DNA from: Octopus sinensis
Taxonomy: Eukaryota
Direction of reading: 5' to 3'
Length of the DNA stretch: 64,000 nucleotides
Assembly (NCBI RefSeq): GCF_006345805.1
Contig: NC_043024.1
Span: 11,780,001 to 11,844,000 of the forward strand
Shown: one piece after another, positions 37,371-62,530 of the stretch
How the letters are laid out: the number at the start of each line of letters is the position of its first letter
Numbering within the stretch: the stretch's first letter is position 1
Notes under the pieces: model-generated
Seen by the model: only the letters and a program-made list of their open reading frames with translations
The model's database searches: none
What the model was told of the DNA's origin: nothing
Translations under genes and position numbers: made by a program

Positions 37371-37517
37371 TGAAAGTAACCGAATTCAAAGAATTAATTG
37401 CATAGAACAAGAGCAACCTTTGTCCTTCAAAGAATCTGCAGTGGGAAAGAAATAGCATTGGAGTTTCTGATATCTTTCTTATTTTCTCGTTTTACAGATT
37501 AATCTACGTCAGAAAAT

Positions 37518-37711
37518 ATGTTGCGTCAATCAATGCATTTGAAATTGACCATTGCTTTGGTACTATGCATAGGAGTACTCTTTGAGATTGGTGCTTATTC
37601 AGACATCTGCTCCAAATGTAGGTGTAACACGGTTAAGAAAACTGCAGACTGTCAAAAAAATCAATTCGTTTCTCTCCCTAAATCAACAATTTTGAAAGTA
37701 TTTGAGCATTT
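37518..37711 (+). CDS. LRR-LU-SEA-like gene, coding exon 1: signal peptide plus LRRNT
   Basis: Acceptor ttttctcgttttacAG (37497), in-frame TAA upstream of the ATG, MLRQSMHLKLTIALVLCIGVLFEIGAYSDICSKCRCNTVKKTADCQKNQFVSLP...VFEH(L), donor GTAAGT at 37712 (phase 2). Confidence 0.9.
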
Positions 37712-37817
37712 GTAAGTATTAAACAATTTTTTTCATGTTTTCTACATACAATGGTTTAAAAGCTGATTGGCCATGTTTTCAGTCGCTCTGAGGTCAAGTA
37801 AACCGCTTTTCAATATA

Positions 37818-39087
37818 TTGGGTTGGCAACTAAGTTCCGCTGTTTTTTGTTTTAAAAAGTTTTAATAAAAAAATAACTAATTAATCAATAATGTATTCAC
37901 CATTCTTGTTTACAACTTCTTCCCAACGTTCAACAAGATTTTCAGTACCTCGTTAAGTAGAAATCACCAGATTTCAACTCGAAAAATTGATCCAACCAAG
38001 TTCTCAAATTTTGCATCAGTATTGAACGAAACTCTGCACATAGCATTTGAAAGAGATCGAAAGAGGTGGGAATCCGTTGGTGCCAAATCAGGAGAGTACG
38101 GCGGGTGTGGCAACACTTCCCAGCCATGCGTTTGAATGGCTTTCTTGGTCATATTGGCGATATGAGGGCTGGCGTTGTTGTGCAGCAGAAGAACTCCGTG
38201 CTGTTGATTAGGTCTTTACTTTTGAATAGCCGTGTTGAGTCGTTCCATCTGTTGAACATAGAATTCTGTGTTGATCGTATAGTTCCGTTCAAGCAATTCG
38301 TAATGGATAATCCCTTCCTAGTCCCACCATACGCAAAACATCGTTTTACGCGGATGAAGATCTTGTTTTACGCACGGTGTCGCTTGTTTACCGGGGCTAA
38401 GCCATTCCTTACGCTGCTTCATATTGATGTACAGGCATCATTTTTCGTCGCCAGTGACGATTCGGTAAAGAAATCATTGCTTGTGTCCATGAGTTGAGCG
38501 GTAACAAGCAAGCAAACCAGCGGAGATTGCGGCTCGTTGATTTTTGTTGTTGTCACTTAAAGCATGCGGAATCCGTGCTCCATACTTCTGAACCTTTCCC
38601 ATCGAGTGAAGATGCTTCTCTATGGCAGTGTGGGAGCATTCCATTTTCTTTTCCAGTTCCCTTGTCGTTTCACAAGAATTTTCGTGCAAAAGTTAGTTTA
38701 ATCACTCTTCATCGAACTAAACTGGACGGCCAGAATGAGGTGCGTCTTTGAGGTCAAAATTTCCATTTTCGAACTTGGCATACCAATCACGAGCGGTTCT
38801 TTCAGCTATGGCACCCTCTCCATACACAACACAAATGTCGCGAGCAGCTTTTGCGGCCTTAGAACCTTGATTAAAAGCAAAAAGAAGGTGTCGAAAATGC
38901 TCGTTTTTCTTAACTTGATGTTCCATTTTAATGATCTGGAAATAAACAAAAATTAACTAAAATTAACTAGAAAAAACAAAAAACAAAAACCAAATAGATT
39001 CCAAAGTGATTCAAAAATAGAATTCTCGAAAAAAAAAAATAGATTCCAAAATTTAATAAAACGGCGGGAACTTAGTTGTCAACCCAA
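37818..39087 (-). mobile_element. Full-length mariner (mellifera-like), inactivated transposase
   Basis: TA TSDs at 37816-17 and 39088-89; TIRs ttgggttggcaactaagtt / aacttagttgtcaacccaa; MEHQVKKNEHFRHLL...WYAKFENGNFDLKD...GRP...GWEVLPHPPYSPDLAPTDSHLFRSL, with frameshifts. Confidence 0.93.
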
Positions 39088-39100
39088 TATGTTAACTATT

Positions 39101-39462
39101 GTGGAGGCGCAATGGCCCAGTGGTTAGGGCAGCGGTCTCGCGGTCATAGGATCGCGGTTTCGATTCCCAGACCGGGCGTTGTGAGTGTTTATTGGGCGAA
39201 AACATCTAAAGCTCCACGAGGCTCCGACAGGGGATGGTGGTGATCCCTGCTGTACTCTTTCACCACAACCTTCTCTCACTCTTACTTCCTGTTTCTGTTG
39301 TACCTGTATTTCAAAGGGCCGGCCTTGTCACTCTCTGTGTTAAGGGTACACGTGTCTGTGGAGTGCTCAGCCACTTACACGTTAATTTCACGAGCAGGCT
39401 GTTCCGTTGATTCGGATCAACCGGAACCCTCGTCGTCGTAACCGACGGAGTGCTTCCATTCC
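39101..39462 (+). mobile_element. SINE family C monomer with 12-bp TSD
   Basis: atgttaactatt at 39089-39100 and 39463-39474. Confidence 0.9.
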
Positions 39463-39710
39463 ATGTTAACTATTATTGAATCTAGAATTTAAAGTATTAC
39501 AAAGATGAGATTAGACAAATATCTGAACGTTGATGATATTGATCTCTTGCATTAAAGCTTATGGCATCTTTACGGAAGAGAAAGTACGAAGACTTTAGGG
39601 CCAGCAAAATGTGTGGTATATATCGGAGTATTTTATTTTCCCTACACTTGAGGAAACTATTTACGGTTACTTCAATAATGTATCGGTGAGAAAGTCACAG
39701 AATAGCTTAT

Positions 39711-40394
39711 GTTGGAAGCACTCCGTCGGTTACGACGACGAGGGTTCCGGTTGATCCGAATCAACGGAACAGCCTGCTCGTGAAATTAACGTGCAAGTGG
39801 CTGAGCACTCCACAGACACGTGTACCCTTAACGTAGTTCTCGGGGATATTCAGCGTGACACAGAGAGTGACAAGGCCGGCCCTTTGAAATACAGGTACAA
39901 CAGAAACAGGAAGTAAGAGTGAGAGAAAGTTGTGATGAAAGAGTACAGCAGGGATCACCACCACCCCCTGCCGGAGCCTCGTGAAGCTTTAGGTGTTTTC
40001 GCTCAATATGGAAGCACTCTGTCGGTTACGACGACGAGGGTTCCGGTTGATCCGAATCAACGGAACAGCCTGCTCGTGAAATTAACGTGTAAGTGGCTGA
40101 GCACTCCACAGACACGTGTACCCTTAACGTAGTTCTCGGGGATATTCAGCGTGACACAGAGAGTGACAAGGCCGGCCCCTTGAAATACAGGTACAACAGA
40201 AACAGGAAGTAAGAGTGAGAGAAAGTTGTGGTGAAAGAGTACAGCGGGGATCACCACCATCCCCTGCCTGAGCCTCGTGGAGCTTTAGGTGTTTTCGCTC
40301 AATAAACACTCACAACGCCCGGTCTGGGAATCGAAACCGCGATCCTATGACCGTGAGACCGCTGCCCTAACCACTGGGCCATTGCGCCTCCACA
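39711..40394 (-). mobile_element. SINE family C dimer with 14-bp TSD
   Basis: acagaatagcttat at 39697-39710 and 40395-40408. Confidence 0.92.
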
Positions 40395-40923
40395 ACAGAA
40401 TAGCTTATAACTACCGAGTGATTGTATTAATTTTACAATTAAAACGATAGATTAACTACAGATAATTACGAGATCTGATTAAATTGCTAAACTTTTTAAA
40501 TACATAATCGGAGAATATAAAATAATCTCATTAGAACAGCTTATGGCACATATGTTTTTAGGGCCCTTCATGAATAAAATAATGTAGATATCACGAACAT
40601 ATTAATTACTTTTATAAAAGTATTTAACTTTAAAATTGAAAACACATAATTTATAATTACTTTATTAACTTTCAGTAATGAGTTCAACTCTTAGCATTTC
40701 TCAAAAATGCGACAAAGATTAGTCCTGGAAGGATAAGTTTCTCAAACATTTAACGTTTCAAAAGATGGGATAGAAGAAAATTTATTAAATATTTAATACA
40801 TGTTCATGGCAGTCGTAATATCTATTCTATATTCCCAGGGATTATCTTTTATCCTTTATTTTTTCAATCATTAGACTGCGGCCATGAAGGATTTCAGTCG
40901 AATAGATCGACCCTTATGACTTC

Positions 40924-41119
40924 ATATTCCAGATTTGTGGTCTGTGCAGCCAGTTACTTTGAACTGTGGACAGGCTATTCTATTCCTTCAGTTAGCCTAC
41001 AAAAGCTACAATCTGGATGATCCGATGCTATTTGCCCATGTCCACGTAGACACATTCGAGAAATCCAGATGGGACCGGTCAATCAGCTGAAGAAGCCTGA
41101 ACAGAATTTGCGACGCTTC
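40924..41119 (-). mobile_element. L1/Tx1-like fragment, inverted copy of 44397-44504 plus 45079-45170 without the hAT MITE
   Basis: Reverse-complement match that runs straight through a single atccagat. Confidence 0.8.
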
Positions 41120-41419
41120 CGTCTACACAAACCACTCACAAGACTTTGGTCAGCCCGAGGCTATAGTAGAAGACACTTGCCCAAGGTGCCACGCAGTAGG
41201 ACTGAACCAGCAAGCTACTTACCACACAGCCACTCCTACGCCTATAATATATATATATATAAATATACATATATATACGGCGGGCTTCTTTCATTTTCCA
41301 TCTACCAAATCTACTCACAAGGCTTTGGTCAGCCCGGGGCTATAGCAGAAGACACTTGCCCAGGTGCCACGCAGTAGGACTGAACCAGCAAGCTACTTAC
41401 CACACAGCCACTCCTACCT

Positions 41420-41489
<70 letters not shown>

Positions 41490-41842
41490 CGGCGGGCTTC
41501 TTTCATTTTCCATCTACCAAACCACTCACAAGGCTTTGGTCGGCCCGAGGCTATAGTAGAAGACACTTGCCCAAGGTGCCTGAACCCGGAACCAAGTGGT
41601 TGGTAAGCAAGCTACTTACCACACAGCCTACTCCTACTTCATAATTGACGGATATGATTGATATTTTCAGGAGAACACATTTGTATCCATATATGATAAT
41701 CTTATTAATATCAATATTCGTTGCAATGTTTTAATTTCCCATAAATAATATTTAAGCTTCTATTTTATGTTAAATATAATTTTTTAACAGTTTGTATTTA
41801 ATCATAAATACAGTTTCTTATGAACCCACTTTCATGTTACAG

Positions 41843-41914
41843 AGATCTGGGTGAAAATAATATCAAGAATATTGATATAGAAATTATCCAAACTTATAGC
41901 CATTTAAAGAAACT
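41843..41914 (+). CDS. Coding exon 2: LRR cassette (72 nt, phase 2-2)
   Basis: catgttacAG; DLGENNIKNIDIEIIQTYSHLKK(L); GTAAGT. Confidence 0.9.
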
Positions 41915-41947
41915 GTAAGTATTTTTGATATTATTTCATTAATTGTG

Positions 41948-42325
41948 ACGTATATTTGCCATTTAAATATGGCTAACCCCTAAGGGTGGATGCTACTGTA
42001 GTTTGTAGCCCCAGGAGGACACCTCCTCCAGCTGGCTATAGACACACCTTCTGTGCCCTATCAGTAATTGCAAAGGGAAGCCATCCTTCCCGTCTTCAAC
42101 TTATGATACACACGGACTCGAGTTTCTGGGTATTGACCCGTCATGTCCAGAAATACCCAGAAACTCGAGTCAGTTGAAGACGGGAAGTGTGGCTGCTCTT
42201 TGCAGATACTGATAGGGCACAGAAAGTGTGCCTATAGCCAGCTGGAGGAGGTGTCCTCCTAGGGCTACAAACTACAGTAGCATCCACCCTTAGGGGTTAG
42301 CCATATTTAGATGGCAAATATACGT
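41948..42325. repeat. Fold-back element (154-bp arms) with inner 20-bp hairpin and HHR 3' half
   Basis: 41948-42101 vs 42172-42325; 42115-42134 vs 42152-42171; minus strand tga-c-GGGT-caat-ACCC-a-GAAAC-tcga-GTC. Confidence 0.88.
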
Positions 42326-42364
42326 TACGATGTGTTACCGCTACTGTTTATAACTCGCTCTCTC

Positions 42365-42765
42365 TTTACTCTTTTACTCTTTTACTTGTTTCAGTCATTT
42401 GACTGCGGCCATGCTGGAGCACCGCCTTTAGTCGAGCATTCCGACCCCGGGACTTATTCTTTGTAAGCCTAGTACTTATTCTATCGGTCTCTTTTGCCGA
42501 ACCACTAAGTTACGGGGACGTAAACACACCAGCATCGGTTGTCAAGCAATTCTAGGGGGACAAACACAGACACACACACATACATATATATACATATATA
42601 CGACAGGCTTCTTTCAGTTTCCGTCTACCGAATCCACTCACAAGGCATTGGTCGGCCCGGGGCTATAGCAGAAGACACTTGCCCAAGATGCCACGCAGTG
42701 GGACTGAACCTGGAACCATGTGGTTCGTAAGCAAGCTACTTACCACACAACCATTCCTGCGCCTG
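42365..42765 (-). mobile_element. SINE family B
   Basis: Full reverse copy. Confidence 0.88.
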
Positions 42766-42907
42766 AGATTTATTATTTCATTAATTGTATATTTAAAAAA
42801 TTATCCCTTAATTATCCCTTATATTTTATAAACCTAATTATTTAGTCATAATATTTTATATTTTGTTTCTCCGTTCAGTTTCTTATGAACTCACTTTTAT
42901 GTTGCAG

Positions 42908-42979
42908 AAATATAAGTTATAATAAACTCCAGAATATTAAAAGGGGATTCTTCCAAAGGCTGACCCTTTTAGAGGAATT
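42908..42979 (+). CDS. Coding exon 3: LRR cassette (72 nt)
   Basis: tatgttgcAG; NISYNKLQNIKRGFFQRLTLLEE(L); GTAAGT. Confidence 0.9.
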
Positions 42980-43035
42980 GTAAGTAGGAGCAGTCTTGTT
43001 GATATTTTTCATTCACGATGTATTCTAGATATGCA

Positions 43036-43094
<59 letters not shown>

Positions 43095-43171
43095 TTCTTC
43101 TTTCTTTCTTTCTCACTATATCATTCTCATCCTTTTCTGCTCTATAGATGCACGTGGGTATGTAAACGTAA

Positions 43172-43213
<42 letters not shown>

Positions 43214-43362
43214 ATTAGAGATACAAACCACTATTAGGCAAATCATACAATGAAAAACTTAAGCCAATACATAAGATTAATTAATTTATATTATTTTAAT
43301 ATATATCAAAATTATTAAAAAAAGATAATGAGTATAACACATGAATATATATATTATATATA

Positions 43363-43400
<38 letters not shown>

Positions 43401-43899
43401 GTGACCGCGTGTGCACCGTTGGCGATTTTTTCCTCCGTCTTTCCTTCTTTGGATCTTTCCTTTTCCTATGTTTCTGACCATCACCATCAATACCTCCACT
43501 ATCAGCAACAAAAAGTAAAACACCCAAGCATAACAACAACAAGCACACAAGAACACCACCAGCAGCAGACAAACACACAACAACTTGACCTAAGCAAATG
43601 ACTCCACTCAAATATACAAAAGAATTTAACACCCACCTTTGTGCTAGAGATAGAAAAATCTAATTCATAGCACAAGGGGAAGACATAGAAATGGAGGGGC
43701 AACTTTTGATCAAAGGCAAGATCTCTTGCTAAAACGTTATAAGATAATGAGAAGCGTAGGGACTGCTTTATTCAATGCCACTAACAGGATTGTGAAAGAT
43801 TTCTTCAAGAACCCCCAAGCAGGCAGGAAATCGAATGATCCTGTTCAACATACAGCATAATCACCAAAGTACTGATCCTTTCCCCTTTTTCTTCTTCCC

Positions 43900-46245: not shown

Positions 46246-46317
46246 ATATCTCGGACATAATAATATCTCTACTATTGAAGACGGGAGTTTTGCGAATCTT
46301 TTACAGTTAAAAAAGCT
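46246..46317 (+). CDS. Coding exon 4: LRR cassette (72 nt)
   Basis: tatgttacAG; YLGHNNISTIEDGSFANLLQLKK(L); GTAAGT. Confidence 0.92.
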
Positions 46318-47309: not shown

Positions 47310-48090
47310 AAGGCGGCGAGCTGGCAGAATCGTTAGCACGCCGGGCGAAATGCGTAGCCGTATTTCGTCTGCCGTTACGTTCTGAGTTCAAATTCCGCCG
47401 AGGTCGACTTTGCCTTTCATCCTTTCGGGGTCGAAAAATTAAGTACCAGTTACGCACTGGGGTCGATGTAATCGACTTAATCCGTTTGTCTGTCCTTGTT
47501 TGTCCCCTCTATGTTTAGCCCCTTGTGGGTAGTAAAGAAATAGGTATTCCGTCTGCCGTTACGTTCTGAGTTCAAATTCCGCCGAGGTCGACTTTGCCTT
47601 TCATCCTTTCGGGGTCGATAAATTAAGTACCAGTTACGCACTGGGGTCGATGTAATCGACTTAATCCGTTTGTCTGTCCTTGTTTGTCCCCTCTGTGTTT
47701 AGCCCCTTGTGGGTAGTAAAGAAATAGGTATTTCGTCTGCCGTTACGTTCTGAGTTCAAATTCCGCCGAGGTCGACTTTGCCTTTCATCCTTTCGGTGGT
47801 CGATAAATTAAGTACGAGTTACGCACTGGGGTCGATGTAATTGACTTAATCCCTTTGTCTGTCCTTGTTTGTCCCCTCTGTGTTTAGCCTCTTGTGGGTA
47901 GTAAAGAAATAGGTATTTCGTCTGTCTTTACGTTCTGAGTTCAAATTCCGCCGAGGTCGACTTTGCCTTTCATCCTTTCGGGGTCGATAAATTAAGTACC
48001 AGTTACGCACTGGGGTCGATGTAATCGACTTAATCCGTTTGTCTGTCCTTGTTTGTCGTATCTGTGTTTAGCCCCTTGTGGGTAATAAAG

Positions 48091-48093
<3 letters not shown>
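47310..48093 (+). mobile_element. SINE family A multimer (head plus 4 bodies)
   Basis: 184-185-bp units. Confidence 0.9.
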
Positions 48094-48178
<85 letters not shown>

Positions 48179-48203: not shown

Positions 48204-48275
48204 GAATCTCCGCGGGAACGCATTGTCGACCATATCTTCAAGAATATTTCCGCATCTGCTATCTTTGACTTATCT
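48204..48275 (+). CDS. Coding exon 5: LRR cassette (72 nt)
   Basis: ttttttcttattctgtAG; NLRGNALSTISSRIFPHLLSLTY(L); GTAAGT. Confidence 0.92.
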
Positions 48276-49926: not shown

Positions 49927-49998
49927 AGATTTGAGCGAAAGTCAAATAAAAGAAATTGAAGATGGCGCTTTTTTATTCCTCCCCAAAATAACTGAGAT
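49927..49998 (+). CDS. Coding exon 6: LRR cassette (72 nt)
   Basis: tttttttgtctttcAG; DLSESQIKEIEDGAFLFLPKITE(I); GTAAGT. Confidence 0.92.
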
Positions 49999-50748: not shown

Positions 50749-50927
50749 TGACCTCAGGTCAAATAGCAATATGGTGTGTGGATGTCACCTACCAGCGTTG
50801 GTAAACTATACAAAGAAAGCATTCGCAAGACATCTGGTAGTTTCAGGAATATGTTATGCACAAATTGAAATTGGTCATCATAGTCAAGGAGATCCTTGGG
50901 ACATATCACAATATACGTATTGTTCAC
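50749..50927 (+). CDS. Coding exon 7: last LRR strand plus LRRCT (phase 2-1)
   Basis: ttgtatttacAG; DLRSNSNMVCGCHLPALVNY...SGICY...WDISQYTYCS; donor GTTAGT. Confidence 0.87.
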
Positions 50928-51039
50928 GTTAGTAAAATTTTCTTTGGTTCTGTTGTTACTCTATAGGTACCACTAACAAAACTCCAGGGTATTCTCTGCT
51001 GTTCACATTATGATGATATACATATATATGCATTCATGC

Positions 51040-51670
51040 CTACCTACCTACCCACCCACCTACCAACCTACCAACCTACCTACCTACCTACCTACCTACC
51101 TACCTACATACTTACCTACCTACCTACCTACCTACCTACCTACCTACCTACCTACCTACTTACATACCTACCTACCAACCCTACCTACCTACCTACTTAC
51201 ATACCTACCTACCTACTTACATACCTACCTACCAACCCTACCTACCTACCTACCTACCTACCTACCTACCTTGCTACATACCTATCTACCTATCTACCTA
51301 TCTACCTACATACCTACCTACCTACCTACCTACCAACCTACCTACCTACCTACCTACCTACCTACCTACCTACCTACCTACCTACCTACATACCTAGCTA
51401 CCTATCTACCTATCTACCTACATACCTACCTACCCATCTACATGCTTACCTACCCACCTACATACCTACCTACCTACCTACATACATACATACATACATA
51501 CATACCTGGCTACCTATCTACTTAGTTAGCTAGCTAGCTAGCTACCCACCTATCTACGTACCTACCTACCTACATATCTACCTACGTACCTACCTACCTA
51601 CATATCTCCCTACGTACGTACGTACGTACCTACCTACCTACCTATCGTCCTACATACCTACCTAGCTACT
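51040..51670. repeat. (CTAC)n microsatellite
   Basis: Direct reading. Confidence 0.95.
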
Positions 51671-51674
51671 TACC

Positions 51675-53175
51675 TGGCTTTGACGGGAGCCATCATCAAC
51701 AAAAAATGGTGGTTTGCCCTCAAGAGAGCAGTAAAAGCAGAAGCGCTTAGGTACAGCAAAGCACTAGCCATAGATAGAAATAGAGTAGAGGGTGAGCTAG
51801 TTAAGAAGCTAGAAGAGGCAATTAGAAGCGGCATCGCATCCGACGTTTTGGCAGCGAGGTTGGCCCTCGACCAACACTTCAACGCCAAACACGAAGGGTG
51901 TGTTTTCAGAGCAAGGATGCGTGCTCTAAGGAACGAAAGTGTTAGAGCCGCGCGAGAGGCCCGGGTGGCAGAGGCGCAACAGGGCAACAAAGCCACCATT
52001 CGGTCTCTGGTAGATGAACAGGGGCGCGAATTGCTCGAACCAACCAAAATGTATGAGGCCTTTCAACAGCATTTTTTCCGACTGTTCAGGACGAGTGGCT
52101 GGCAAGAACGTAGGGTGGATTTCAGTGCCTCCACGATTACACAGCCTACCACGACTCTCGACAAGAGAGGCATGGCGTTGCGAAGGTGCCATCACGGCGT
52201 CGGAAGTGAGGGACGCGATGGCAGGATGTCGAGGGACAAATCGCCGGGTTTGGATGGTCTACCCCGCGAGCTTTAGACTTGTTTGGCGGCGTCAGCAAAA
52301 CTGGTAAGAAAACGGGAGCATTCCTGGTTTTGTGAGCCGAGGAGCCGTAACACTGCTGAAGAAAGATCTAAACAAGGGGGATGTAATAGATAACTTTAGG
52401 CCCATCACTCTGCTTAATGCAGACTTCAAAATTTTGGCCAAGGTGTTAGCTAAGAGGCAGGCACTTGTCATCGAGAAACTGGTCGACAAGGCGCAAACGT
52501 GCGCCGTGCCGGGCCGGAGCATCCATGACAATCTCCACCTGATGCGCTACATCATAGACAGGGTAGTTAAGGAACATGGCATGGGTGGGGCGCTGATCAA
52601 TTTGGATCGATCGAAAGCTTTCGATAGGGTAGACCATCGATACTTGGAGGCTGTCCTCAGAGCGGCTGGTTTCGGTCCCGTCTTCCGCGGCTGGATAGAG
52701 AGGAGACATCCCTGACGGACCGAACGTACGATGTCGAAAGGTCTCGATAGATGTCCATTTACGCGATGTCCATTTACGCGAATTACAGAGGTATCTGCTT
52801 GGTAATTCGCGTAAATGGACATCTATCGAGACCTTTCGACATCGTACGTTCGGTCCGTCAGGGATGCCTCCTCTCGTCGCTTCTATACGTATTGACACTC
52901 GAGCCATTATTGCGGAAGCTGGCAACTCTGCATACGCGGACGACGTCACCGTCGTAGTGTCTAGCTACGAGCACATCGAGCTCGTCGGCGAGACACTGAA
53001 AGCCTACGAAGCGGTGACAGGAGCGAAAATCAATCGGGAAAAATCAGTGGCCTGCGACTCGGCACCTGGAGAAGCAAGCCCATGCCATCCACCAGCGCCT
53101 CCGTCATGGGACGCTGGACCGACGGTCCGGTCGAGTTGCTCGGGGTCTGATTTGGTCCGGACCTCAAAATGGACA
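51675..53175 (+). mobile_element. L1/Tx1-clade LINE reverse transcriptase pseudogene
   Basis: KSPGLDGLP..., NFRPITLLNADFKILAKVLA..., NLDRSKAFDRVDH, VRQGCLLSSLLY, YADDVT...GAKINREKS, with frameshifts. Confidence 0.92.
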
Positions 53176-53176
53176 A

Positions 53177-53523
53177 AAATTGGAATTTTTGAAAAGTAAA
53201 AATTTTGCATTATGTAGCTTGTTATTCTCTTTAAGTGAACATTTTCCTGGTTGAAATGCACAGAAAAATGGCGACACAGCAGTCAAAAAATCGTAAAAAA
53301 ATAGGGATTTTCATAGAAAAAAAGCACCTTTTGATGTAAATAATTTTTGGTGTTAACATGGTCCGATTTGAAGTTTTTCTTCTACGGAATAAAGAACAAG
53401 CCTTCTTCTATTAAACTCTCAATTTTGGTCAACTTGCGCCGCAGGGTCTCGGAGGAGATAGTGTTAGTTGAAGGCTACCAAACCTGCCATACACAGACAA
53501 CTTCAGCTTTATATAGAGAGAGA
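53177..53523 (-). mobile_element. Helitron, 3'-truncated copy of the 393-bp family
   Basis: Matches the 26.6-27.7 kb units; A|TC at 53523. Confidence 0.85.
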
Positions 53524-53643: not shown

Positions 53644-53735
53644 ATTACACCTTATTTCAACCGGCTTTGAAGTGCCAATCATGTGAGGGGTCCATATGCA
53701 ATGATTCGGCCGTGACAAGCTGTCCAGGATATAAG
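53644..53735 (+). CDS. Coding exon 8: N-terminal part of the Ly6/uPAR-like domain (phase 1-0)
   Basis: ttatattctatAG; (H)YTLFQPALKCQSCEGSICNDSAVTSCPGYK; AAG|GTAAAC. Confidence 0.87.
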
Positions 53736-54264: not shown

Positions 54265-54448
54265 CCTATGTGTATGACGAATGTGTCAATAACTGATGAT
54301 ACGCAGAAGGTTGTGGGGTCCTGTCGTACATACAAAGAATGTATCGAAACCGAGGTGAACACACGGAAAACATGCCAATCATGGGCTGATGGTACAGATT
54401 GTGTTTCTTGTTGCTCCGGAAGTTTATGCAACAAGCATTACTTTGATG
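54265..54448 (+). CDS. Coding exon 9: remainder of the Ly6/uPAR-like domain (phase 0-1)
   Basis: tttattgttatAG; PMCMTN...GSC...EC...TC...DCVSCCSGSLCNKHYFD; G|GTGAGT. Confidence 0.9.
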
Positions 54449-54480: not shown

Positions 54481-55388
54481 GTGTGGAGGCGCAATGGCCC
54501 AGTGGTTAGGGCAGCGGACTCGCGGTCATAGGATCGCGGTTTCGATTCCCAGACCGGGCGTTGTGAGTGTTTATTGAGCGAAAACACCTAAAAAGCTCCA
54601 CGGGGCTCCGGCAGGGGATGGTGGTGATCCCTGCTGTACTCTTTCACCTCAACTTTCTCTCACTCTTACTTCCTGTTTCTGTTGTACCTGTATTTCAAGG
54701 GGCCGGCCTTGTCACTCTCTGTGTCACGTTGAATATCCCCGAGAACTACGTTAAGGGTGCACGTGTCTGTGGAGTGCTCAGCCACTTACACGCTAATTTC
54801 ACGAGCAGGCTGTTCCGTTGAATCGGATCAACCGGAACCCTCGTCGTCGTAACCGACGGAGTGCTCCTGCAGGGGGTGGTGGTGATCCCTGCTGTACTCT
54901 TTCACCACAACTTTCTCTCACTCTTACTTCCTGTTTCTGTTGTACCTGTATTTCAAAGGGGCCGGCCTTGTCACTCTCTGTGTCACGCTGAATATCCCCG
55001 AGAACTACGTTAAGGGTGCACGTGTCTGTGGAATGCTCAGCCACTTACACGTTAATTTCACGAGCAGGCTGTTCCGTTGATTCGGATCAACCGGAACCCT
55101 CGTTGTCGTAACCGACGGAGTGCTCCTGCAGGGGGTGGTGGTGATCCCTGCTGTACTCTTTCACCACAACTTTCTCTCACTCTTACTTCCCGTTTCTGTT
55201 GTACCTGTATTTCAAAGGGGCCGGCCTTGTCACTCTGTGTGTCACGCTGAATATCCCCGAGAACTACGTTAAGGGTGCACGTGTCTGTAGAGTGCTCAGC
55301 CACTTACACGTTAATTTCACGAGCAGGCTGTTCCGTTGATTCGGATCAACTGGAGTGCTCATCGTCGTAACCGACGGAGTGCTTCCAC
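54481..55388 (+). mobile_element. SINE family C trimer with 11-bp TSD
   Basis: atgaatctaga at 54470-54480 and 55389-55399; 259-bp body period. Confidence 0.92.
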
Positions 55389-55792
55389 ATGAATCTAGAC
55401 ATGGTTTATGATGACTTGTAATCTACTATTTAATACGAACGGTGAAGAATAGATTTTGTATAAGGAGATACTTTACCGTAATTATACCTTGTATCTTTTA
55501 GTCGTTTCAGTCATTTGACTGTGGCCATGCTGGGGCACCACCTTCGGGAATTTATCTTCGAATGAATCAACCCCAGTGCTTATTATTTTAAACATTGTAC
55601 TTATTCTATTGGTCTGTTTCGCCGAACCTCTAAGTTACGGGGACGTAAAAACGCCAACATCGGTTGTCAACGTGTGGTGATGGTGGGACAAGCACAGACA
55701 CAAAGACACACACACACCTGCATACATACGTAGACATACATACTCACACAATACATATATATACATGCATACATACGTACATACATACATGC

Positions 55793-55826
<34 letters not shown>

Positions 55827-55834
55827 TTATTTAT

Positions 55835-55867
<33 letters not shown>

Positions 55868-56692
55868 AATATATATAAATCAAAAAACGGAATAAGAACG
55901 TAACGAACGACACTAAAAACATATGGACAGATAGACGATACAAAAACGGACAAGGAAAAACTGGACGGATCATTCGTGGCCTGTTATTCATCAGTCAAGC
56001 TTCTAATTATCACTACAGTTTCGGCCTGTTGCACTTGAGACTGCTCAAAATTGGTTGGCCCCCAAAAGTCTAAGCTAAGAGCATTAAATGTTTGGAAGAA
56101 AAAATGCGAACGTGTACAACAACATAGACAAAACACAAAAACAAGAAAACGTAGAAAATGTTACACAATTACAAATACAAAGAAGAAGAGGATAACAACA
56201 GGTGTCTTTCGATTAATAAGGACAAGTTAAGGTGTGCTGAGGTGTGGAGTGAAAGTCTGGATGCACAAGCAAAGAGGACGGTCAGGAGACAGGAAAATAA
56301 GGTATTGTACGGGCGGCGGGCGGGTTGAGAAAGAAAGATCATGCTTGGCCGAACACCGGTCACGTGGAAGGAACAGGGAGCAGTAGGGAGCGGAGGGATT
56401 GAAGAATTAGGGGACGATCTTCTTTCGGTTTCCGTGTATCAAATCCAGTCACAAGTCTTCAGTCGGCCCCAGACGCTATAGAAGAAGACACTCGCTCAAG
56501 GTGCCATGCACTGGGACTGAACCCGGAATGATGTGGTTGGGAAGCAGCTTTCTACCACACAGTCCGAGCTGGCAGAAACGTTAGCACGCCGGGCGAAATG
56601 CGCAAGATAACGATTGGGTTGATAGAATCAACTAAACCCCGTCCCCTGAACTTACTTGACTTACACCAAAATTTCAAATCAATATTTTTCAG

Positions 56693-56803
56693 GTCGGAAA
56701 TGTGTTTATAAAACTATTCTCTTGGAGACTGGACAAACGTTTGAAAAGAGCGGTAGCCAATGCGAATGCCAAGAGAACGGAAATATTATCTGCTATCCTA
56801 AGC
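56693..56803 (+). CDS. Coding exon 10: 4-Cys FN1/VWC-like module (phase 1-1)
   Basis: aatatttttcAG; (G)RKCVYKTILLETGQTFEKSGSQCECQENGNIICYPK; GTAAGT. Confidence 0.88.
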
Positions 56804-56954
56804 GTAAGTTTGTTTATTCAATCAGTATTTCTTATATAAACGAGGCTACGATTATTCTATTTTGTGTGACATAATGGATTCCTTATCACTGCTACGGAGT
56901 TTTATTAATTGCTATTTATATAAACGAAGCTACGATTATTCTCTTTTGTGTTTA

Positions 56955-58165
56955 GGCGGCAAGCTAGCAGAGACGTTAACACGCCGGGCGAAATGCGTAG
57001 CCGTATTTCGTCTGCCCCTACATTCTGAGTTCAAATTCCACCGAGGTCGACTTTGCCTTTCATCCTTTCGGGGTCGATTAAATAAGTACCAGTAAATCAC
57101 TGGGGTCGATATAATCGACTTAATCCCCTTGTCTGTCCTTGTTTGTCCCCTCTGTGTTTAGCCCCCTGTGGGTAGTAAAGAAATAGGTATTTCGTCTGCC
57201 GCTACGTTCTGAGTTCAAATTCCGCCGAGGTCAACTTTGCCTTTCATCCTTTCGGGGTCGATTAAATAAGTACCAGTTACGCACCGGGATCGATATAATC
57301 GACTGAATCCCCTTGTCTGTCCTTGTTTGTCCCCTCTGTGTTTGGCCCCCTGTGGGCAATAAAGAAATAAATACTTAAATGAGTACAATAGTAGTTGGTG
57401 CAAGACAAGAATCAATAACTTTATGGGGACTTTTAAAAAGATCAAATTTAATCCCGGAATATCCCAAGCCCAATGCTTGATGTATGTATTATGGCTTGAT
57501 CCCATTTTAACAAAGTTTAAACTCACACACAAATATAGTATTTGGATGGGTAGCTTCATATTTCAGATTTCTTTATTGCCCACAAGGGGCTAAACACAGA
57601 GGAGACAGACAAGGACAGACAAACGGATTAAGTCGATTATATCGACCCCAGTGCGTAACTGGTACTTAATTTATCGAACCCGAAAGGATGAAAGGCAAAG
57701 TCGACCTCGGCGGAATTTGAACTCAGAACATAACGGCAGATGAAATACCTATTTCTTTATTATCCAAAAGGGGATAAACATAGAGGGGACAAACATGGAC
57801 AGACATGGGTATTAAGTCGATTATATCGACCCCAGTGCGTAACTGGTACTTAATTTATCGACCCCGAAAGGATGAAAGGCAAAGTCGACCTCGGCGGAAT
57901 TTGAACTCAGAACGTAGCAGCAGACGAAATTCCTGTTTCTTTACTACCCACAAGGGGCTAAACACAGAGGGGACAAAGAAGGACAGACAAACGGATTAAG
58001 TCGATTACATCGATCAGTGCGCAACTGGTGCTTAATTTATTGACCCCGAAAGGATGAAAGGCAAAGTCCACCTCGGCGGAATTTGAACTCACAACGTAAC
58101 GACAGACGAAATACCGCTAAGCATTTCATCCGGCGTGCTAAGGTTTCTGCCACCTCGCCGCCTTG
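56955..58165. mobile_element. Two SINE family A multimers, convergent (56955-57380 +, 57570-58165 -)
   Basis: Standard heads and 184-bp bodies. Confidence 0.85.
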
Positions 58166-58544
58166 ATGGGTAGCTTGGTTGGATCTCGGTCAGTTTCGAC
58201 GTTGTGGCTTCACTTGATCAAATGATTTAACTGCCCATTCAATTAGCGTGAATAGGCTGAGAGCCCCACAGGCACTTGTACTTTTAAAACAATTCTCTGA
58301 CAGAAACAATGAGACACAATACATGGTGAAGTTGTAGCTTTGAAGTATGAATGTAATAGGTTGTAGTACAGTTTTTGTCAACGCAATCTCATTCTGAGTC
58401 AGTGGATGGAACCAATGCTAGTAAAAAAAAATATGAAAATGATTAAAGTACCCGTCATAAACTGGGGTCGGTAATATTGGCTTACACCCTACACTCCCGA
58501 ATTTGCTGGCCTGGTTTCAGAATTTGAAACCGTTATAATTCTTT

Positions 58545-58943
58545 TATTCTTTTATTTGTTTCAGTCATTTGGCTGCGGCCATGCTGGAGCACCGCTTTTA
58601 GTCGAACAAATCGACCCCGGAACTTATTCTTTGTAAGCCCAGTAATTATTCTATCGGTCTCTTTTGCCGAATCGCTAAGTGACGGGGACGTAAAAACACC
58701 AGGATCGGTTGTCAAGCAATGCTAGGGGGACAAACACAGACACACAAACACACACAAACATATATATATAAACATATATACGACAGGCTTCTTTCAGTTT
58801 CCGTCTACCAAATCCACTCACAAGGCTTTGGTCGGCCCGCGGCTATAGCAGAAGACACTTGCCCAAGATGCACGCAGTGGGACTGAACCCGGAACCATGT
58901 GGTTGGTAAACAAGCTACTTACCACACAGCCACTCCTGCGCCT
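58545..58943 (-). mobile_element. SINE family B
   Basis: Full reverse copy. Confidence 0.88.
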
Positions 58944-58995
58944 ATATATATATATATATATATAATATATATATATAATATATATATATATATAG

Positions 58996-59065
<70 letters not shown>

Positions 59066-59147
59066 ATAATATATATTATATTATATATTATATATATATA
59101 TATATATATATCTATATATAATATATAATATATAATATAGATATATA

Positions 59148-59199
<52 letters not shown>

Positions 59200-59766
59200 A
59201 TATATATATCGATACAATAATTGTTTCTTGTCAGGAACAAAAAAGGTTTAATAGGACTGCATAGAAGTGCTCTATTGGAAGAGACAAAAATATCAAACTA
59301 AAATCATTGAACAAGCAAATACAAAGTCAACCACATGTCATTTCATGATTCGAACATTTAATTATAGAATAAACATATAACCCGCAAGATGGAACAAAAT
59401 TCATGTACAGCACACGTAATAATAATAATATGGTATGGTGCGAGAAAAATTCTTATCATTAAAACTTAGAATTAATATTCTAGTGATTCAAAGAGAATAC
59501 ATTATAAAAGGACGTAGAAAGTAAAATATAATATAAGTAATATATACAAATATATAGGTATATAAAAATATAGGCATATAAAAAAAATATATAAAACATA
59601 TAAATATATATACATATAGGAGCATATAAAGATATAATATATATATATCGTGTAAATGAAGTAAAATAAGGTTCATCGTTTAGAAATCTAATCAGGTAAA
59701 ATAAGCCTTTATATAAGAAGGAAATCATGTTTACTGATATACCTATATATTTTTATATATTACTTA

Positions 59767-60025
59767 CTAGCAGTATCGCCGGCGTTGCTCGGGTTGTAAG
59801 GGAAAACTATATAAGCATTTTTAGAGAGTTATTCCCTTATAGATGCCAATTCGGGCTTTCTTAGCCATTTCTGTTTTGGTGTCTTCAAGCCATGAAGTCG
59901 TTGTTCTAAAAGAACGCTGGTCTCCTTGACAAACGCTTTACGACGTTGATTTCTTTTACACTCCCTTCCCCACAGCTTCACGAGGGAGGGAAGAAGGGGG
60001 AGAAGCAACACAGGTGCAGGTGTGA
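59767..60025 (-). mobile_element. Helitron 3' part (same internal type as 9851-10335)
   Basis: CTAG at 59767-70, hairpin, shared internal sequence. Confidence 0.8.
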
Positions 60026-60094
60026 CCATGTATTTGCTTGTTGACCTTGTATTTGCTTGTTCAAAGATTTTAGTTTGATATATATATATTATAT

Positions 60095-60133
<39 letters not shown>

Positions 60134-60721
60134 TATTTAAATATATATATATTATATATATAGAGATAATATATATATATGCATATTTAAATATATATAT
60201 ATAGCTATATATATATATAGTATATATATATATAATATATATATATATATATAATATATATATATATATACGACGGGCTTCTTTCAGTTTCATCCACCAA
60301 ATCCACTCACACGGCTTTGGTCGGCCCGGGGTTATAGTAGAAAACACTTGCCCAAGTTGCCACGCGGTGGGACTGAACCCAGAACCATGACGTCGGTTAG
60401 CAAGCTACTTACCACACAGCCACTCCTGCGCCTATAATCGATAATTCTATATTTATATCTTTGCCGTGTATATCTTACGTACTTTACTCTTTTACTCTTT
60501 TACTCTTTTACTCTTTTACTTGTTTCAGTCATTTGACTGTGGCCATGCTGGAGCACCGCCTTTAGTCGAGCAAATCGACCCTGGGACTTATTCTTTTGTA
60601 AGCCCAGTACTTATTCTATCGGTCTCTTTTTGCCGAACCGCTAAGTGAATTTGTGCATATAAAACTCGTGTCTCATTCGTAACGGCGCCATTTTCTCTTC
60701 TGCGTTTCTGTTCTTCCGTAG

Positions 60722-60798
60722 CTTGGAACTTCGTATTCCACTTCGTGTACAGAAGAAACTCGACTTCGAAAACCGCTTCTCAAGAAATAGTTGAAATT
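60722..60798 (+). CDS. Coding exon 11 (phase 1-0), start of SEA-like region
   Basis: ttttctcttctgcgtttctgttcttccgtAG; (P)WNFVFHFVYRRNSTSKTASQEIVEI; GTAAGT. Confidence 0.82.
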
Positions 60799-60859
60799 GT
60801 AAGTATCTCTTATAAACTCTTTCTTTCTCTCTCTCTCTCTCTCTTCCATTTCTATGTGT

Positions 60860-61400
60860 GCGTAATTGTGACTGAGTGTGTGTGTTTGTGTGTGTGTGTG
60901 TGTATTTGTGTGTGTGTGTGTGTCCTTGTGTGTGTGTGTGTGTACGTGTGTGTGTGTTTGTGTGTGCTTGTGTGTGTGTGTGTGTGTTTGTGTGTTTGTG
61001 TGTGTTTGTGTGTGTTTGTGTGTGTGTTTTTGTTTGTGTGTGTGTGCTTTGTGTGGTGTGTGCTTGTGTGTGTGTGTCCTTGTGTGTGTGTGTGTATGTG
61101 TACGGGTGTGTGTTTGTGTGTGCTGTGGTGTGTGTGTGTGTGTGTTGTGTTTGGTTGGTTTGTTGTGTGTGTGTGGTTGTTTGTGTGTGTGTGTGGTGTG
61201 TGTTGTATGTGTGTGTATGTGTGTATGTGTTCTTGCTACTGAATGTGTTATATGTGTCTTTGTATGTGTGAGTGAGTCTGCATGCTTCTGAATGTATGTG
61301 TGGGCGGGTGCTCGTGAGTGTGTGAGTGTGCATGTGTGTGCATGTGTGTGTAAGTGTGCGCGTGCTTGTGAGTGTCTCTGTGTGAGCGTGTGTGTGTGTG
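60860..61400. repeat. (TG)n microsatellite
   Basis: Direct reading. Confidence 0.95.
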
Positions 61401-61454
61401 GGGAGGTGGTACATGTAAAGTGTTAGCAGACGCTCAGGGAAGGAAAGAAAGATG

Positions 61455-61488
61455 GTTTAACGTTTCGGACATGGTCTTCTTCAGAAAC
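61455..61488 (-). ncRNA. Minimal HHR-like motif
   Basis: gttt-CTGAAGA-a-GAC-cat-GTC-c-GAAAC-GTT-aaac. Confidence 0.5.
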
Positions 61489-61525
61489 TGAGAAAAGTTC
61501 AATAGAAAGTCCATAGAAAAATATA

Positions 61526-61582
<57 letters not shown>

Positions 61583-61583
<1 letters not shown>

Positions 61584-61784
61584 ATTAATAGTTATCGCCA
61601 TATTAATATGGCATTCTTATAGCTGTCGGACTGGCAGTGTGAAGCGGCTGACCTCCCTTGTTCGAAGGTTATAATGGATACAGATAGCTATCTTGATGGC
61701 GGTGGCCTCATGGAGCTGACCAGCGGCAGCGATTATTCTTATATCTATAAGAATGCCATATTAATATGGCGATAACTATTAATT
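61583..61784. repeat. Perfect 40-bp inverted repeat around a 122-bp GC-richer core
   Basis: 61583-61622 vs 61745-61784. Confidence 0.88.
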
Positions 61785-61829
61785 TCCAGTAAACGCTGCC
61801 GTATAATCTCTTTTATAGAGACTTAGTAA

Positions 61830-61873
<44 letters not shown>

Positions 61874-61885
61874 CTTCCATTGCAG

Positions 61886-61938
61886 ATGGAGAAAGAGCTT
61901 TCGAAACTATTATGGATATTCAGAGTCGAATATTGTGG
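61886..61938 (+). CDS. Coding exon 12 (53 nt, phase 0-2)
   Basis: tacttccattgcAG; MEKELSKLLWIFRVEYC(G); G|GTAAGC. The frame is fixed by the phases of exons 11 and 13. Confidence 0.8.
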
Positions 61939-62375
61939 GTAAGCATAAACTTTTATCACGGTTATTCCAATCTGTTTTTGCTCGAAGTATTCCAGTGCTA
62001 TTTAACGCATACATATAATATTACAATAACTGATGATGTTGCATTTTCGACCCAAACTATACAAAATTCATATTTTCAATCAAATGTTCAAGTACAGTAA
62101 CACCCGCGATAGGTGAAAATCCGCGAAGTAGAAACAGTACTGTACTGTATGTTTTTTAAAATTATTTTTATAATTTGTATATATACAGGTGCAGGAGTGG
62201 CTGTGTGGTAAGTAGCTTGTTTACCAGCCACATGGTTCCGGGTTCAGTCCCACTGCGTTGCATCTTGGGACTGAACCCGGAACCATGTAGTGGGTAAACA
62301 AGCTACTTACCACAGCCACTCCTGCGCCTATAATAATAATTATTATTTCATTTCTGTTTGAAAATCCTACTTCAG

Positions 62376-62530
62376 GTTACTTAAAGATAAAGAAATATTT
62401 ACTATAAACTGCACCTCGTCAGAAAGCAATGTTAAAGATGTTTGGACGAAGATATGGAAAGCCTTTAATAATTCACAGGAATTTCAAGACAGAGGAATTC
62501 CGAAAAATAGCATGATGTTACTTCGTGAAA
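62376..62530 (+). CDS. Coding exon 13 (phase 2-1); the gene continues beyond the window
   Basis: cctacttcAG; LLKDKEIFTINCTSSESNVKDVWTKIWKAFNNSQEFQDRGIPKNSMMLLRE; GTAAGT. The other two frames hit stops. Confidence 0.85.

What the first reader, a model, noticed from the sequence alone, without database searches (positions are those of the whole stretch)
37498..62530. Hidden 13-exon gene with an unfamiliar LRR + three-finger + FN1/VWC-like + SEA-like ectodomain
Seen: 13 GT-AG exons (194, 5x72, 179, 92, 184, 111, 77, 53 and 155 nt) with intron phases 2,2,2,2,2,2,1,0,1,1,0,2,1 join into 1405 nt (468 codons) without a stop. There is a signal peptide and eight N-x-S/T sequons (NIS, NIS, NYT, NDS, NVS, NST, NCT, NNS). 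Established: 72-nt phase-2 exons and LRRNT/LRRCT caps are typical of extracellular LRR proteins. I know of no named protein joining LRRs to an LU domain and a SEA-like module. Inference: a lineage-specific cell-surface receptor or adhesion/recognition protein.
Basis: partly seen in the sequence, partly recalled or inferred. Interest (0 to 1): 0.85.

Follow-up and report, generated by a model that had tools for sequence, protein, structure and literature searches.

The report
Front half of octopus adhesion GPCR
The exon chain is a real gene, but it is the outer, ligand-binding front half of a fast-evolving octopus adhesion G-protein-coupled receptor from an already published family, and one of its 13 proposed exons is probably not real.

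Summary
The chain is real. Twelve of the 13 exons (37518-62530, + strand) are confirmed by homology and by exon-by-exon synteny with Octopus bimaculoides. They encode a signal peptide, LRRNT, five 24-residue LRRs, LRRCT, a Ly6/uPAR three-finger domain and a ferredoxin-like "SEA-like" domain.

The 111-nt "FN1/VWC-like" exon (56693-56803) is absent from the orthologous intron and from all 38 relatives. Six comparable decoys sit in the other introns. Skipping it keeps the frame and restores the family junction.

The protein is not a new receptor type. In O. bimaculoides the orthologue continues into HormR-like, GAIN, GPS and 7tm_2 exons. Full-length paralogues carry LRR, LU, SEA-like, GPS and 7TM in one chain, with weak HRM matches in others. 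The window ends 1.47 kb after exon 13, and the next exon lies about 1.8 kb on in O. bimaculoides.

This fits the octopus-specific adhesion-GPCR expansion of Ritschard et al. 2019. The new points are modest:
- An LU module and a cryptic SEA-like module, each a phase 1-1 exon set, go unseen by domain scans.
- The ectodomain evolves at dN/dS of about 1 yet stays open.

The parts
37518..37711 (+). Exon 1 (194 nt from the ATG): signal peptide plus LRRNT cysteine cap and the start of LRR1. An AG lies just before 37498, so a 5' UTR part may start there.
   Evidence: tblastn to P0001, E=2e-20, 62% identity. Collinear with L001 9698-10327 at 81%. GTAAGT donor.
41843..41914 (+). Exon 2, 72 nt, phase 2-2, one LRR
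   Evidence: Pfam LRR_8 E=4e-27 on the joined protein
42908..42979 (+). Exon 3, 72 nt LRR
46246..46317 (+). Exon 4, 72 nt LRR
48204..48275 (+). Exon 5, 72 nt LRR
49927..49998 (+). Exon 6, 72 nt LRR
50749..50927 (+). Exon 7, 179 nt: last LRR plus LRRCT cap (CGCHLP...C...C). Ends in phase 1.
   Evidence: tblastn to P0001, P0003, P0071 and P0080, E=1e-8 to 1e-12
53644..53735 (+). Exon 8, 92 nt: first part of the LU/three-finger domain (L-K-C-Q-S-C...)
54265..54448 (+). Exon 9, 184 nt: rest of the LU domain, ending CC-x4-CN. Exons 8+9 total 276 nt and form a phase 1-1 module.
   Evidence: tblastn E=1e-17 to L001. Family profile hits LYPD1 6zss at E=2.6e-4. Foldseek to Lynx2 TMt 0.71.
56693..56803 (+).
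   Evidence: Absent from the orthologous intron and from all relatives. No Pfam hit. One of 7 in-frame decoys.
60722..60798 (+). Exon 11, 77 nt: first strand of the SEA-like domain (WNFVFHFVY...)
   Evidence: Aligns to the family motif W-x-x-S-F-V-F. Its acceptor and 3' end align to L001 on both sides of the assembly gap.
61886..61938 (+). Exon 12, 53 nt (MEKELSKLLWIFRVEYC)
   Evidence: tblastn to paralogues and to L001 33168-33224, 74% identity over the exon
62376..62530 (+). Exon 13, 155 nt: rest of the SEA-like domain. Ends in phase 1 with a GTAAGT donor, so the gene runs on beyond the window. Exons 11-13 total 285 nt and form a phase 1-1 module.
   Evidence: P0096 E=1e-9. AF2 beta-alpha-beta-beta-alpha-beta fold, pLDDT 85-94.

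Best explanation
The supported exons encode the membrane-distal part of the extracellular region of an octopus-lineage adhesion GPCR. The order is signal peptide, LRRNT, five LRRs, LRRCT, one Ly6/uPAR three-finger domain and one ferredoxin-like SEA-like domain. The remaining exons (HormR-like, GAIN with GPS, 7TM, tail) lie past the 3' end of the window.

Inferred mechanism, by analogy with other adhesion GPCRs:
- The LRR arc and the LU domain bind a still unknown surface or soluble partner.
- The SEA-like and HormR domains act as a spacer or lever.
- The GAIN domain cleaves itself at the GPS. The orthologue reads CSCNHLT/NFALLMD there.
- Partner binding or mechanical pull exposes the tethered peptide, which activates the 7TM bundle.

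The ectodomain changes amino acids as fast as silent sites while keeping every cysteine and the reading frame. That fits a recognition surface under diversifying selection. The gene model is shown. The signalling mechanism and the ligand are inferred.
For: Synteny: in O. bimaculoides locus L001 the orthologue of exons 1-9 (P0001) is followed on the same strand by a gene starting at the exon-12 orthologue. Its product hits GAIN_ADGRA3 (faint), GPS and 7tm_2. P0096, the older model of that product, gives GAIN 26.5 bits, GPS 52.8 and 7tm_2 81. The split coincides with an N-run that swallows exon 11.

Full-length paralogues join everything in one chain. P0105, P0073, P0107, P0088, P0093 and P0080 have LRR_8, GPS and 7tm_2. 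They align with the window's LU and SEA-like segments. HRM matches are weak (P0070 and P0071, E=7e-4 and 0.01).

Sources name them adhesion GPCR A3 or G6-like. The GAIN-7TM half is closest to ADGRG6 and ADGRG2 among solved structures, at E=1e-66.

In O. bimaculoides the next exon lies 1.8 kb after exon 13. The window has 1.47 kb left and no such exon.

Selection: NG86 omega is 1.04 overall. Simulated neutral change at the same divergence gives 12.3 stops on average and 0 of 20000 open frames.

Published family: PMC6408891.
Against: The GAIN, GPS and 7TM exons of this particular copy are outside the window and were not seen. There is no transcript evidence for any junction. RefSeq in O. bimaculoides models a short LRR-LU product ending in a small terminal exon, so a truncated secreted isoform cannot be excluded. 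Omega near 1 alone would also fit relaxed constraint. The ligand, the G-protein coupling and GPS cleavage are all untested.
Confidence: 0.85

Rival explanations
1. The full 13-exon model is right. Exon 10 is a true, species-specific phase 1-1 cassette that adds a small four-cysteine VWC/FN1-like module between the LU and SEA-like domains.
For: Good acceptor and GTAAGT donor, 111 nt open, phase 1-1 like the neighbouring modules, and a C...C-x-C...C pattern.
Against: There is no orthologous sequence in the 0.9-kb O. bimaculoides intron. None of the 38 relatives has an insert at the CNK-x-x-F-x-x-W junction. No Pfam hit at E<=10. It sits in a repeat-laden 5.7-kb stretch specific to this species. 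Six other in-frame decoys occur in the introns.
Confidence: 0.1
2. It is a stand-alone secreted or membrane-anchored LRR-LU(-SEA) protein, as the reader proposed and as RefSeq models P0001. The GPCR downstream is then a separate gene.
For: O. bimaculoides annotation has two genes. P0001 ends ...NKHLFVAFSA with its own terminal exon. Several database models are LRR-LU only (P0083-P0086, P0091).
Against: The split falls on an assembly gap inside exon 11. The downstream 'gene' starts with the exon-12 orthologue in the middle of the SEA-like domain. Exon 13 in the window ends in phase 1 at a strong donor with no stop. Full-length paralogues are continuous.
Confidence: 0.07
3. It is a decaying duplicate, that is, a pseudogene or a relic of the N-terminal half.
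For: Omega is about 1. Exons diverge more than the alignable intron blocks. No annotated protein of the window's own species was returned.
Against: There are no stops where about 12 are expected. Indels are multiples of three, and every structural cysteine (LRRNT, LRRCT, LU) is conserved in the alignment. All exon boundaries are AG/GT.
Confidence: 0.04

Closest known systems
Octopus-specific adhesion GPCR expansion ('group 3' of Ritschard et al. 2019, PMC6408891). Database members are named adhesion GPCR A3, G6-like or GPR126-like in O. bimaculoides, O. vulgaris, O. sinensis and Argonauta hians.
   Same: Direct homologues at 35-62% identity over LRRCT, LU and SEA-like. There is a syntenic orthologue. 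LRR N-termini, GPS and 7TM are shared, one paralogue has a Death domain, and the paper reports positive selection.
   Different: The paper and the databases record only LRR, GPS, 7TM and Death. The LU and SEA-like modules are not named. This copy is not represented by an annotated protein of its own species. Its placement inside 'group 3' was inferred from matching features, not from a tree.
ADGRG6 / GPR126 (CUB-PTX-SEA-HormR-GAIN-7TM; PMC6954182)
   Same: It is the best solved-structure match of the GAIN-7TM half. Both have a sequence-cryptic ferredoxin-like SEA domain directly N-terminal to HormR.
   Different: The membrane-distal modules here are LRR plus LU, not CUB plus PTX. There is no furin or GSVVV site in the beta2-beta3 turn. 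SEA homology is not demonstrated.
ADGRA2 / ADGRA3 (GPR124/125: LRR-LRRCT-Ig-HormR-GAIN-7TM). This architecture is from my own knowledge.
   Same: LRR block with LRRCT at the N-terminus followed by HormR-GAIN-7TM. One paralogue is named A3, and there is a faint GAIN_ADGRA3 hit.
   Different: There is no Ig domain; LU plus SEA-like stand in its place. 7TM orthology to ADGRA was not tested.
Ly6/uPAR (LU) three-finger proteins: LYPD1/Lynx2, LYPD6, SLURP1, and the TGF-beta/activin receptor ectodomains
   Same: L-x-C-x-x-C start, CC-x4-CN end, a profile match and a fold match. The exon set is phase 1-1, as is usual for LU (PMC6600238).
   Different: It has 12 cysteines and is embedded as one module in a large multidomain receptor. 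The review describes LU as mostly single-domain or LU-only repeats. All Pfam LU models score below threshold.
Slit / SLITRK / LINGO (the automatic names of the nearest hits)
   Same: Extracellular LRR block with cysteine caps.
   Different: The similarity is confined to the LRRs. There are no EGF, LamG or Ig domains. The names are artefacts of LRR-driven annotation.

Membership tests
Adhesion GPCR (class B2) | GAIN domain with GPS motif followed by a 7tm_2 bundle, in the orthologue and paralogues | tested here: met
   P0096 (orthologue's downstream half): GAIN 26.5, GPS 52.8 and 7tm_2 81 bits, with motif CSCNHLTNFALLMD. P0105, P0107, P0093 and P0080: GPS plus 7tm_2.
Adhesion GPCR (class B2) | GAIN/GPS and 7TM encoded by this window's own gene | not testable with these tools
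   Exon 13 ends at 62530 in phase 1. The window ends at 64000, and the next exon lies about 1.8 kb downstream in O. bimaculoides.
Octopus-specific adhesion GPCR expansion (PMC6408891 group 3) | Octopod-restricted clade of GPS/7TM proteins, some with LRR and one with a Death domain | tested here: met
   There are 38 relatives in 1.84 billion representatives. All ten whose sources were looked up are octopod except one weak scallop hit. Death domain in P0073 and P0105.
Octopus-specific adhesion GPCR expansion (PMC6408891 group 3) | Phylogenetic placement inside the published clade | not tested
   No tree was built, and the paper's sequence list was not compared.
ADGRA subfamily (GPR124/125) | N-terminal LRR block with LRRCT | tested here: met
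   LRR_8 E=4e-27. LRRCT cysteine pattern conserved.
ADGRA subfamily (GPR124/125) | Ig domain between LRRCT and HormR | tested here: not met
   No Ig family hit in the window protein or in full-length paralogues. LU plus SEA-like occupy that position.
ADGRA subfamily (GPR124/125) | 7TM orthologous to ADGRA | not tested
   The best solved-structure matches are ADGRG6, G2, G4 and L3. No ADGRA sequence was on hand.
ADGRG6 / GPR126 | CUB and PTX domains at the N-terminus | tested here: not met
   Only LRR families hit the N-terminal region.
ADGRG6 / GPR126 | SEA-HormR-GAIN-7TM core | tested here: inconclusive
   The order of folds agrees (PMC6954182). SEA homology is sub-threshold and HRM is weak (E=7e-4).
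Ly6/uPAR (LU) domain | L-x-C-x-x-C start, CC-x4-CN end, at least 8 cysteines, three-finger fold | tested here: met
   The sequence shows LKCQSC...CVSCCSGSLCN. Family profile to LYPD1 E=2.6e-4, with LYPD6, ACVR1 and SLURP1 next. Foldseek to Lynx2 TMt 0.71 and to LYPD6 0.55.
Ly6/uPAR (LU) domain | Pfam model at gathering score | tested here: not met
   UPAR_LY6_2 14.8 bits against a cutoff of 31.5. Toxin_TOLIP 10.3 against 21.2. Two of 22 members hit each model.
SEA domain | Ferredoxin-like beta-alpha-beta-beta-alpha-beta sandwich | tested here: met
   AF2 on paralogue P0004 with 21 sequences, pLDDT 85-94 over this part. Foldseek returns ferredoxin-like folds.
SEA domain | Sequence or structure match specific to SEA | tested here: inconclusive
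   Pfam SEA E=0.0017-0.007 in 2 of 22 members, below cutoff. No SEA chain in the Foldseek top 50. No PDB sequence hit.
SEA domain | GSVVV-type autoproteolysis motif or furin site in the beta2-beta3 turn | tested here: not met
   The turn reads VEYCG-x4-6-(I/V)FTI-x-C across the family. There is no GSVVV or R-x-K-R.
   No Pfam hit at E<=10. Absent from the orthologue and from all relatives.

The most novel reading that the evidence does not exclude
The octopod adhesion-GPCR expansion uses an ectodomain design not yet described for any adhesion GPCR. The design is an LRR arc followed by a Ly6/uPAR three-finger module and a cryptic SEA-like module, each a phase 1-1 exon cassette that can be skipped in frame. 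This would make LU a truly mobile module. Together with LRR-exon copy-number change and an omega of about 1, it would form a diversifying recognition repertoire, for example for contact chemosensation or self/non-self recognition in suckers and skin.
Probability: 0.4. Interest if true: 0.6.

Novelty: new member of a known kind. Interest (0 to 1): 0.4.

Why it matters
The finding corrects gene models in two ways. The gene is unannotated in this genome as far as these tools show. In the O. bimaculoides reference it is split into a "LINGO-like" gene and a GPCR gene by an assembly gap.

It also shows that the octopus-specific adhesion GPCRs carry two modules that domain scans miss, LU and SEA-like. 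A review of LU proteins (PMC6600238) treats LU as only a "proto-module" that is rarely placed in foreign protein contexts. A phase 1-1 LU cassette inside an LRR-GPCR would be a clear case of LU shuffling.

Replacement changes run as fast as silent ones in a frame that stays open. This marks the ectodomain as a candidate diversifying recognition surface in a family reported to be expressed in suckers, skin and the axial nerve cord.

Tried and rejected
- Two of the three word-indexed protein searches found nothing: exons 10-13 as query, and my reconstruction of the O. bimaculoides exons 12-16.
I therefore used substrings of paralogue P0004 as query and as folding target. The structure evidence is for a 41%-identical paralogue, not for the window protein.
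- P0002 has no locus on record.
- The first AF2 run with 4 sequences gave pLDDT of about 30 for the LU part and was useless there.
- No Foldseek match reached E<=0.001. I rely on TM-scores and on which folds recur.
- My first choice for exon 12 (61716-61768, GC donor) was wrong. I replaced it with 61886-61938 after comparison with the paralogues.
- I looked for other family exons elsewhere in the window, on both strands, and found none. One weak LRRCT-like hit at 234-320 on the minus strand contains a stop.
- I rejected the Slit, SLITRK and LINGO names as LRR-only resemblance.

Full report
**Observation.** I searched the + strand for AG/GT-bounded open segments of the stated lengths and phases and recovered one coherent chain.
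- Exon 1: 37518-37711, starting at the ATG.
- Five 72-nt exons: 41843, 42908, 46246, 48204 and 49927.
- Later exons: 50749-50927, 53644-53735, 54265-54448, 56693-56803, 60722-60798, a 53-nt exon, and 62376-62530.

The 53-nt exon is 61886-61938. Its product MEKELSKLLWIFRVEYC matches MEHELSNLTGNFEVQYC of the paralogues.

**Is it a gene?** Yes. Pfam sees only LRR families (LRR_8 E=4e-27). The protein search returned O. bimaculoides P0001 (337 aa, 62% identity, 90% coverage) and three O. sinensis proteins at about 40%.

The locus of P0001 (L001, GCA_001194135.2) lies in the same order as the window:
- Exons 1-9, 12 and 13 are found in order by tblastn. Exon 11 is placed by DNA alignment.
- Long intron blocks align at 85-92% identity.

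This is the syntenic orthologue from a closely related octopus.

**What the gene really is.** In L001 the gene directly downstream, on the same strand, starts with MENGLSKKLNGIFRVEYCG. That is the orthologue of exon 12. Its product hits GAIN_ADGRA3 (faint), GPS and 7tm_2. P0096, the older model of that product, scores GAIN 26.5, GPS 52.8 and 7tm_2 81 bits, and reads CSCNHLTNFALLMD at the cleavage site.

I reconstructed its first exons. After the exon-13 orthologue comes a HormR-like pair of exons (C...F-x-W-P-x-T-K-x-G...A-T-R-x-C...G-x-W...C) and then GAIN.

The two O. bimaculoides "genes" are separated by an N-run. The sequence just before the gap aligns to the window's exon-11 acceptor. The sequence just after it aligns to the exon-11 3' end and donor. 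One gene was therefore split by an assembly gap.

In O. bimaculoides the HormR exon lies 1.8 kb after exon 13. The window has 1.47 kb left, mostly a 185-bp tandem SINE array, and contains no such exon.

**The family.** I ran an exhaustive HMMER search of 1.84 billion representatives with the LU-to-HormR part of paralogue P0004. It gave only 38 hits.
- Six long ones (P0073/P0105, P0088/P0107, P0093, P0080) have LRR_8, GPS and 7tm_2. P0073 and P0105 also have a C-terminal Death domain. HRM is weakly seen in P0070 and P0071.
- Sources name them adhesion GPCR A3, G6-like or GPR126-like, from O. bimaculoides, O. vulgaris, O. sinensis and Argonauta hians. There is one weak scallop hit.
- The GAIN-7TM half is closest to ADGRG6 and ADGRG2 among solved structures, at E=1e-66.
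- Ritschard et al. 2019 (PMC6408891) describe an octopus-specific adhesion-GPCR expansion. [quoted passage not shown] The features match, so I place this gene there by inference.

**Exon 10.** Every relative reads ...CNK-x-x-F-x-x-W-x-x-x-F-x-F... across the LU/SEA-like boundary with no insert. Skipping exon 10 gives ...CNKHYFD-A-WNFVFHFVY, which fits the family and keeps the frame.

Further evidence against exon 10:
- The O. bimaculoides intron between exons 9 and 11 is about 0.9 kb and holds nothing similar.
- The window's intron is 6.3 kb, inflated by SINE arrays.
- Pfam finds nothing in the peptide at E<=10.
- With modest splice criteria that nearly all real exons pass, seven frame-preserving open cassettes exist in the introns. 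Exon 10 is one of them, and most of the others are plainly repeat sequence.

I treat exon 10 as unsupported. A species-specific cassette cannot be excluded without transcripts.

**The LU module.** Exons 8+9 read LKCQSC ... CVSCCSGSLCN with 12 cysteines.
- A profile of 21 family segments hits the LU protein LYPD1 (6zss) at E=2.6e-4 over the whole domain. LYPD6, the ACVR1 ectodomain and SLURP1 follow.
- Pfam LU models are sub-threshold.
- AF2 on P0004 with that alignment gave mean pLDDT 78.
- Foldseek returns Lynx2 (TMt 0.71, rmsd 3.1), LYPD6, TGF-beta receptor II ectodomains, uPAR and three-finger toxins, although no E-value is significant.

The LU call is well supported.

**The SEA-like module.** Exons 11-13 fold as beta-alpha-beta-beta-alpha-beta with pLDDT 85-94.
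- Foldseek gives generic ferredoxin-like folds and no SEA entry in the top 50.
- Pfam SEA appears at E=0.0017-0.007 in 2 of 22 members.
- There is no GSVVV or furin site. Instead, two conserved cysteines flank the beta2-beta3 turn.
- In Gpr126 a SEA domain that sequence methods had missed sits in the same place, just before HormR (PMC6954182).

"SEA-like" is a fair label, but homology is unproven.

**Exon logic.** The LRR exons are 72 nt in phase 2-2. LU (276 nt) and SEA-like (285 nt) are each phase 1-1 sets.
- Paralogue models skip LU (P0078, P0087) or SEA-like (P0079, P0082) in frame.
- LRR number ranges from about 5 repeats here to many more in P0105, to judge from its sequence and 8 LRR_8 stretches.
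- The LU review notes phase-1 symmetric exon sets but calls LU only a proto-module (PMC6600238).

**Evolution.** Between the window and O. bimaculoides, NG86 gives the following:

| Region | dN/dS |
|---|---|
| All aligned exons (dN 0.251, dS 0.243) | 1.04 |
| LRRCT | 1.8 |
| LU | 1.0 |
| LRR | 0.9 |
| SEA-like | 0.7 |

Exon 9 is 73% identical, while the neighbouring intron blocks are 87-92%. Yet all structural cysteines are kept and indels are in threes. All exon boundaries are AG/GT. Random change at 21% divergence produces 12.3 stops on average and never an open frame in 20000 trials. This fits a maintained, rapidly diversifying surface rather than decay.

**Mechanism.** Shown: the domain order and the continuity with GAIN/GPS/7TM in the orthologue and in paralogues. 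Inferred from the adhesion-GPCR paradigm: LRR plus LU bind a partner, the GAIN domain self-cleaves, and exposure of the tethered peptide activates the 7TM bundle. The ligand and the G-protein coupling are unknown.

**Verdict.** It is a new, unannotated member of a known octopus-specific adhesion-GPCR family, truncated by the window edge. One of the 13 exons is probably false. The undescribed LU and SEA-like modules and the selection pattern give it moderate interest.

Noticed in passing
window 51039-53199 (+), intron 7: LINE remnant. ORFs 52332-52715 and 52864-53199 hit Pfam RVT_1 (E=6e-13 and 9e-5). A (CCTA)n array at 51039-51675 precedes them.
   Followed up: partly
window 30823-32440, 36808-37149, 47360-48095, 57003-57369, 57567-58115, 62632-63807: Tandem arrays of a ~184-bp unit with a tRNA-like motif (probably SINE-derived), 2 to 10 copies each. 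The last array fills most of the intron after exon 13. The same unit occurs at L001 40085-40422.
   Followed up: partly
window 54605-55383: Three tandem copies of a 259-bp repeat directly downstream of exon 9. Single copies recur at 30004-30370 and 39100-39453, and four times in L001.
   Followed up: no
L001 ~31935-32120 (O. bimaculoides CM046627.1): An assembly gap swallows most of the exon-11 orthologue. RefSeq therefore splits one adhesion-GPCR gene into a 'LINGO-like' protein (XP_052833075.1) and a separate GPCR gene.
   Followed up: yes
window exons versus L001 exons: Coding exons are less conserved than the alignable intron blocks (exon 9 at 73% against 87-92%). dN/dS is about 1.0 overall and 1.8 in LRRCT, with the frame and cysteines intact.
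   Followed up: yes
P0078, P0087, P0079, P0082 (paralogue models): Some database models skip the whole LU module or the whole SEA-like module in frame. This suggests cassette-type alternative splicing or domain loss.
   Followed up: partly
P0073 / P0105 (O. bimaculoides paralogue): A C-terminal Death domain (28.8 bits) follows a serine/glutamine-rich repeat on an adhesion GPCR with many LRRs (8 LRR_8 stretches).
   Followed up: no
P0104 (Mizuhopecten yessoensis, 285 aa hypothetical protein): A scallop protein aligns over its LU part at E=1.5e-4 in HMMER. MAFFT lays its downstream part along the SEA-like region. The LU-SEA-like pair may therefore predate octopods.
   Followed up: no
window 34567-36219: The upstream flank is collinear with L001 5726-6781, where a DDE_1 (pogo/Tigger-type transposase) gene is called. 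The window ORF 34725-35063 gave no Pfam hit.
   Followed up: partly
window 21332-21431: A run of 100 N (assembly gap).
   Followed up: no
window 234-320 (-): Weak LRRCT-like tblastn match (CHLPVLIHQLERIFS, E=0.03) that contains a stop. Probably chance.
   Followed up: partly
window 60876-61400: A long (GT)n microsatellite begins 78 nt after exon 11. It creates many spurious Cys/Val-rich ORFs.
   Followed up: no
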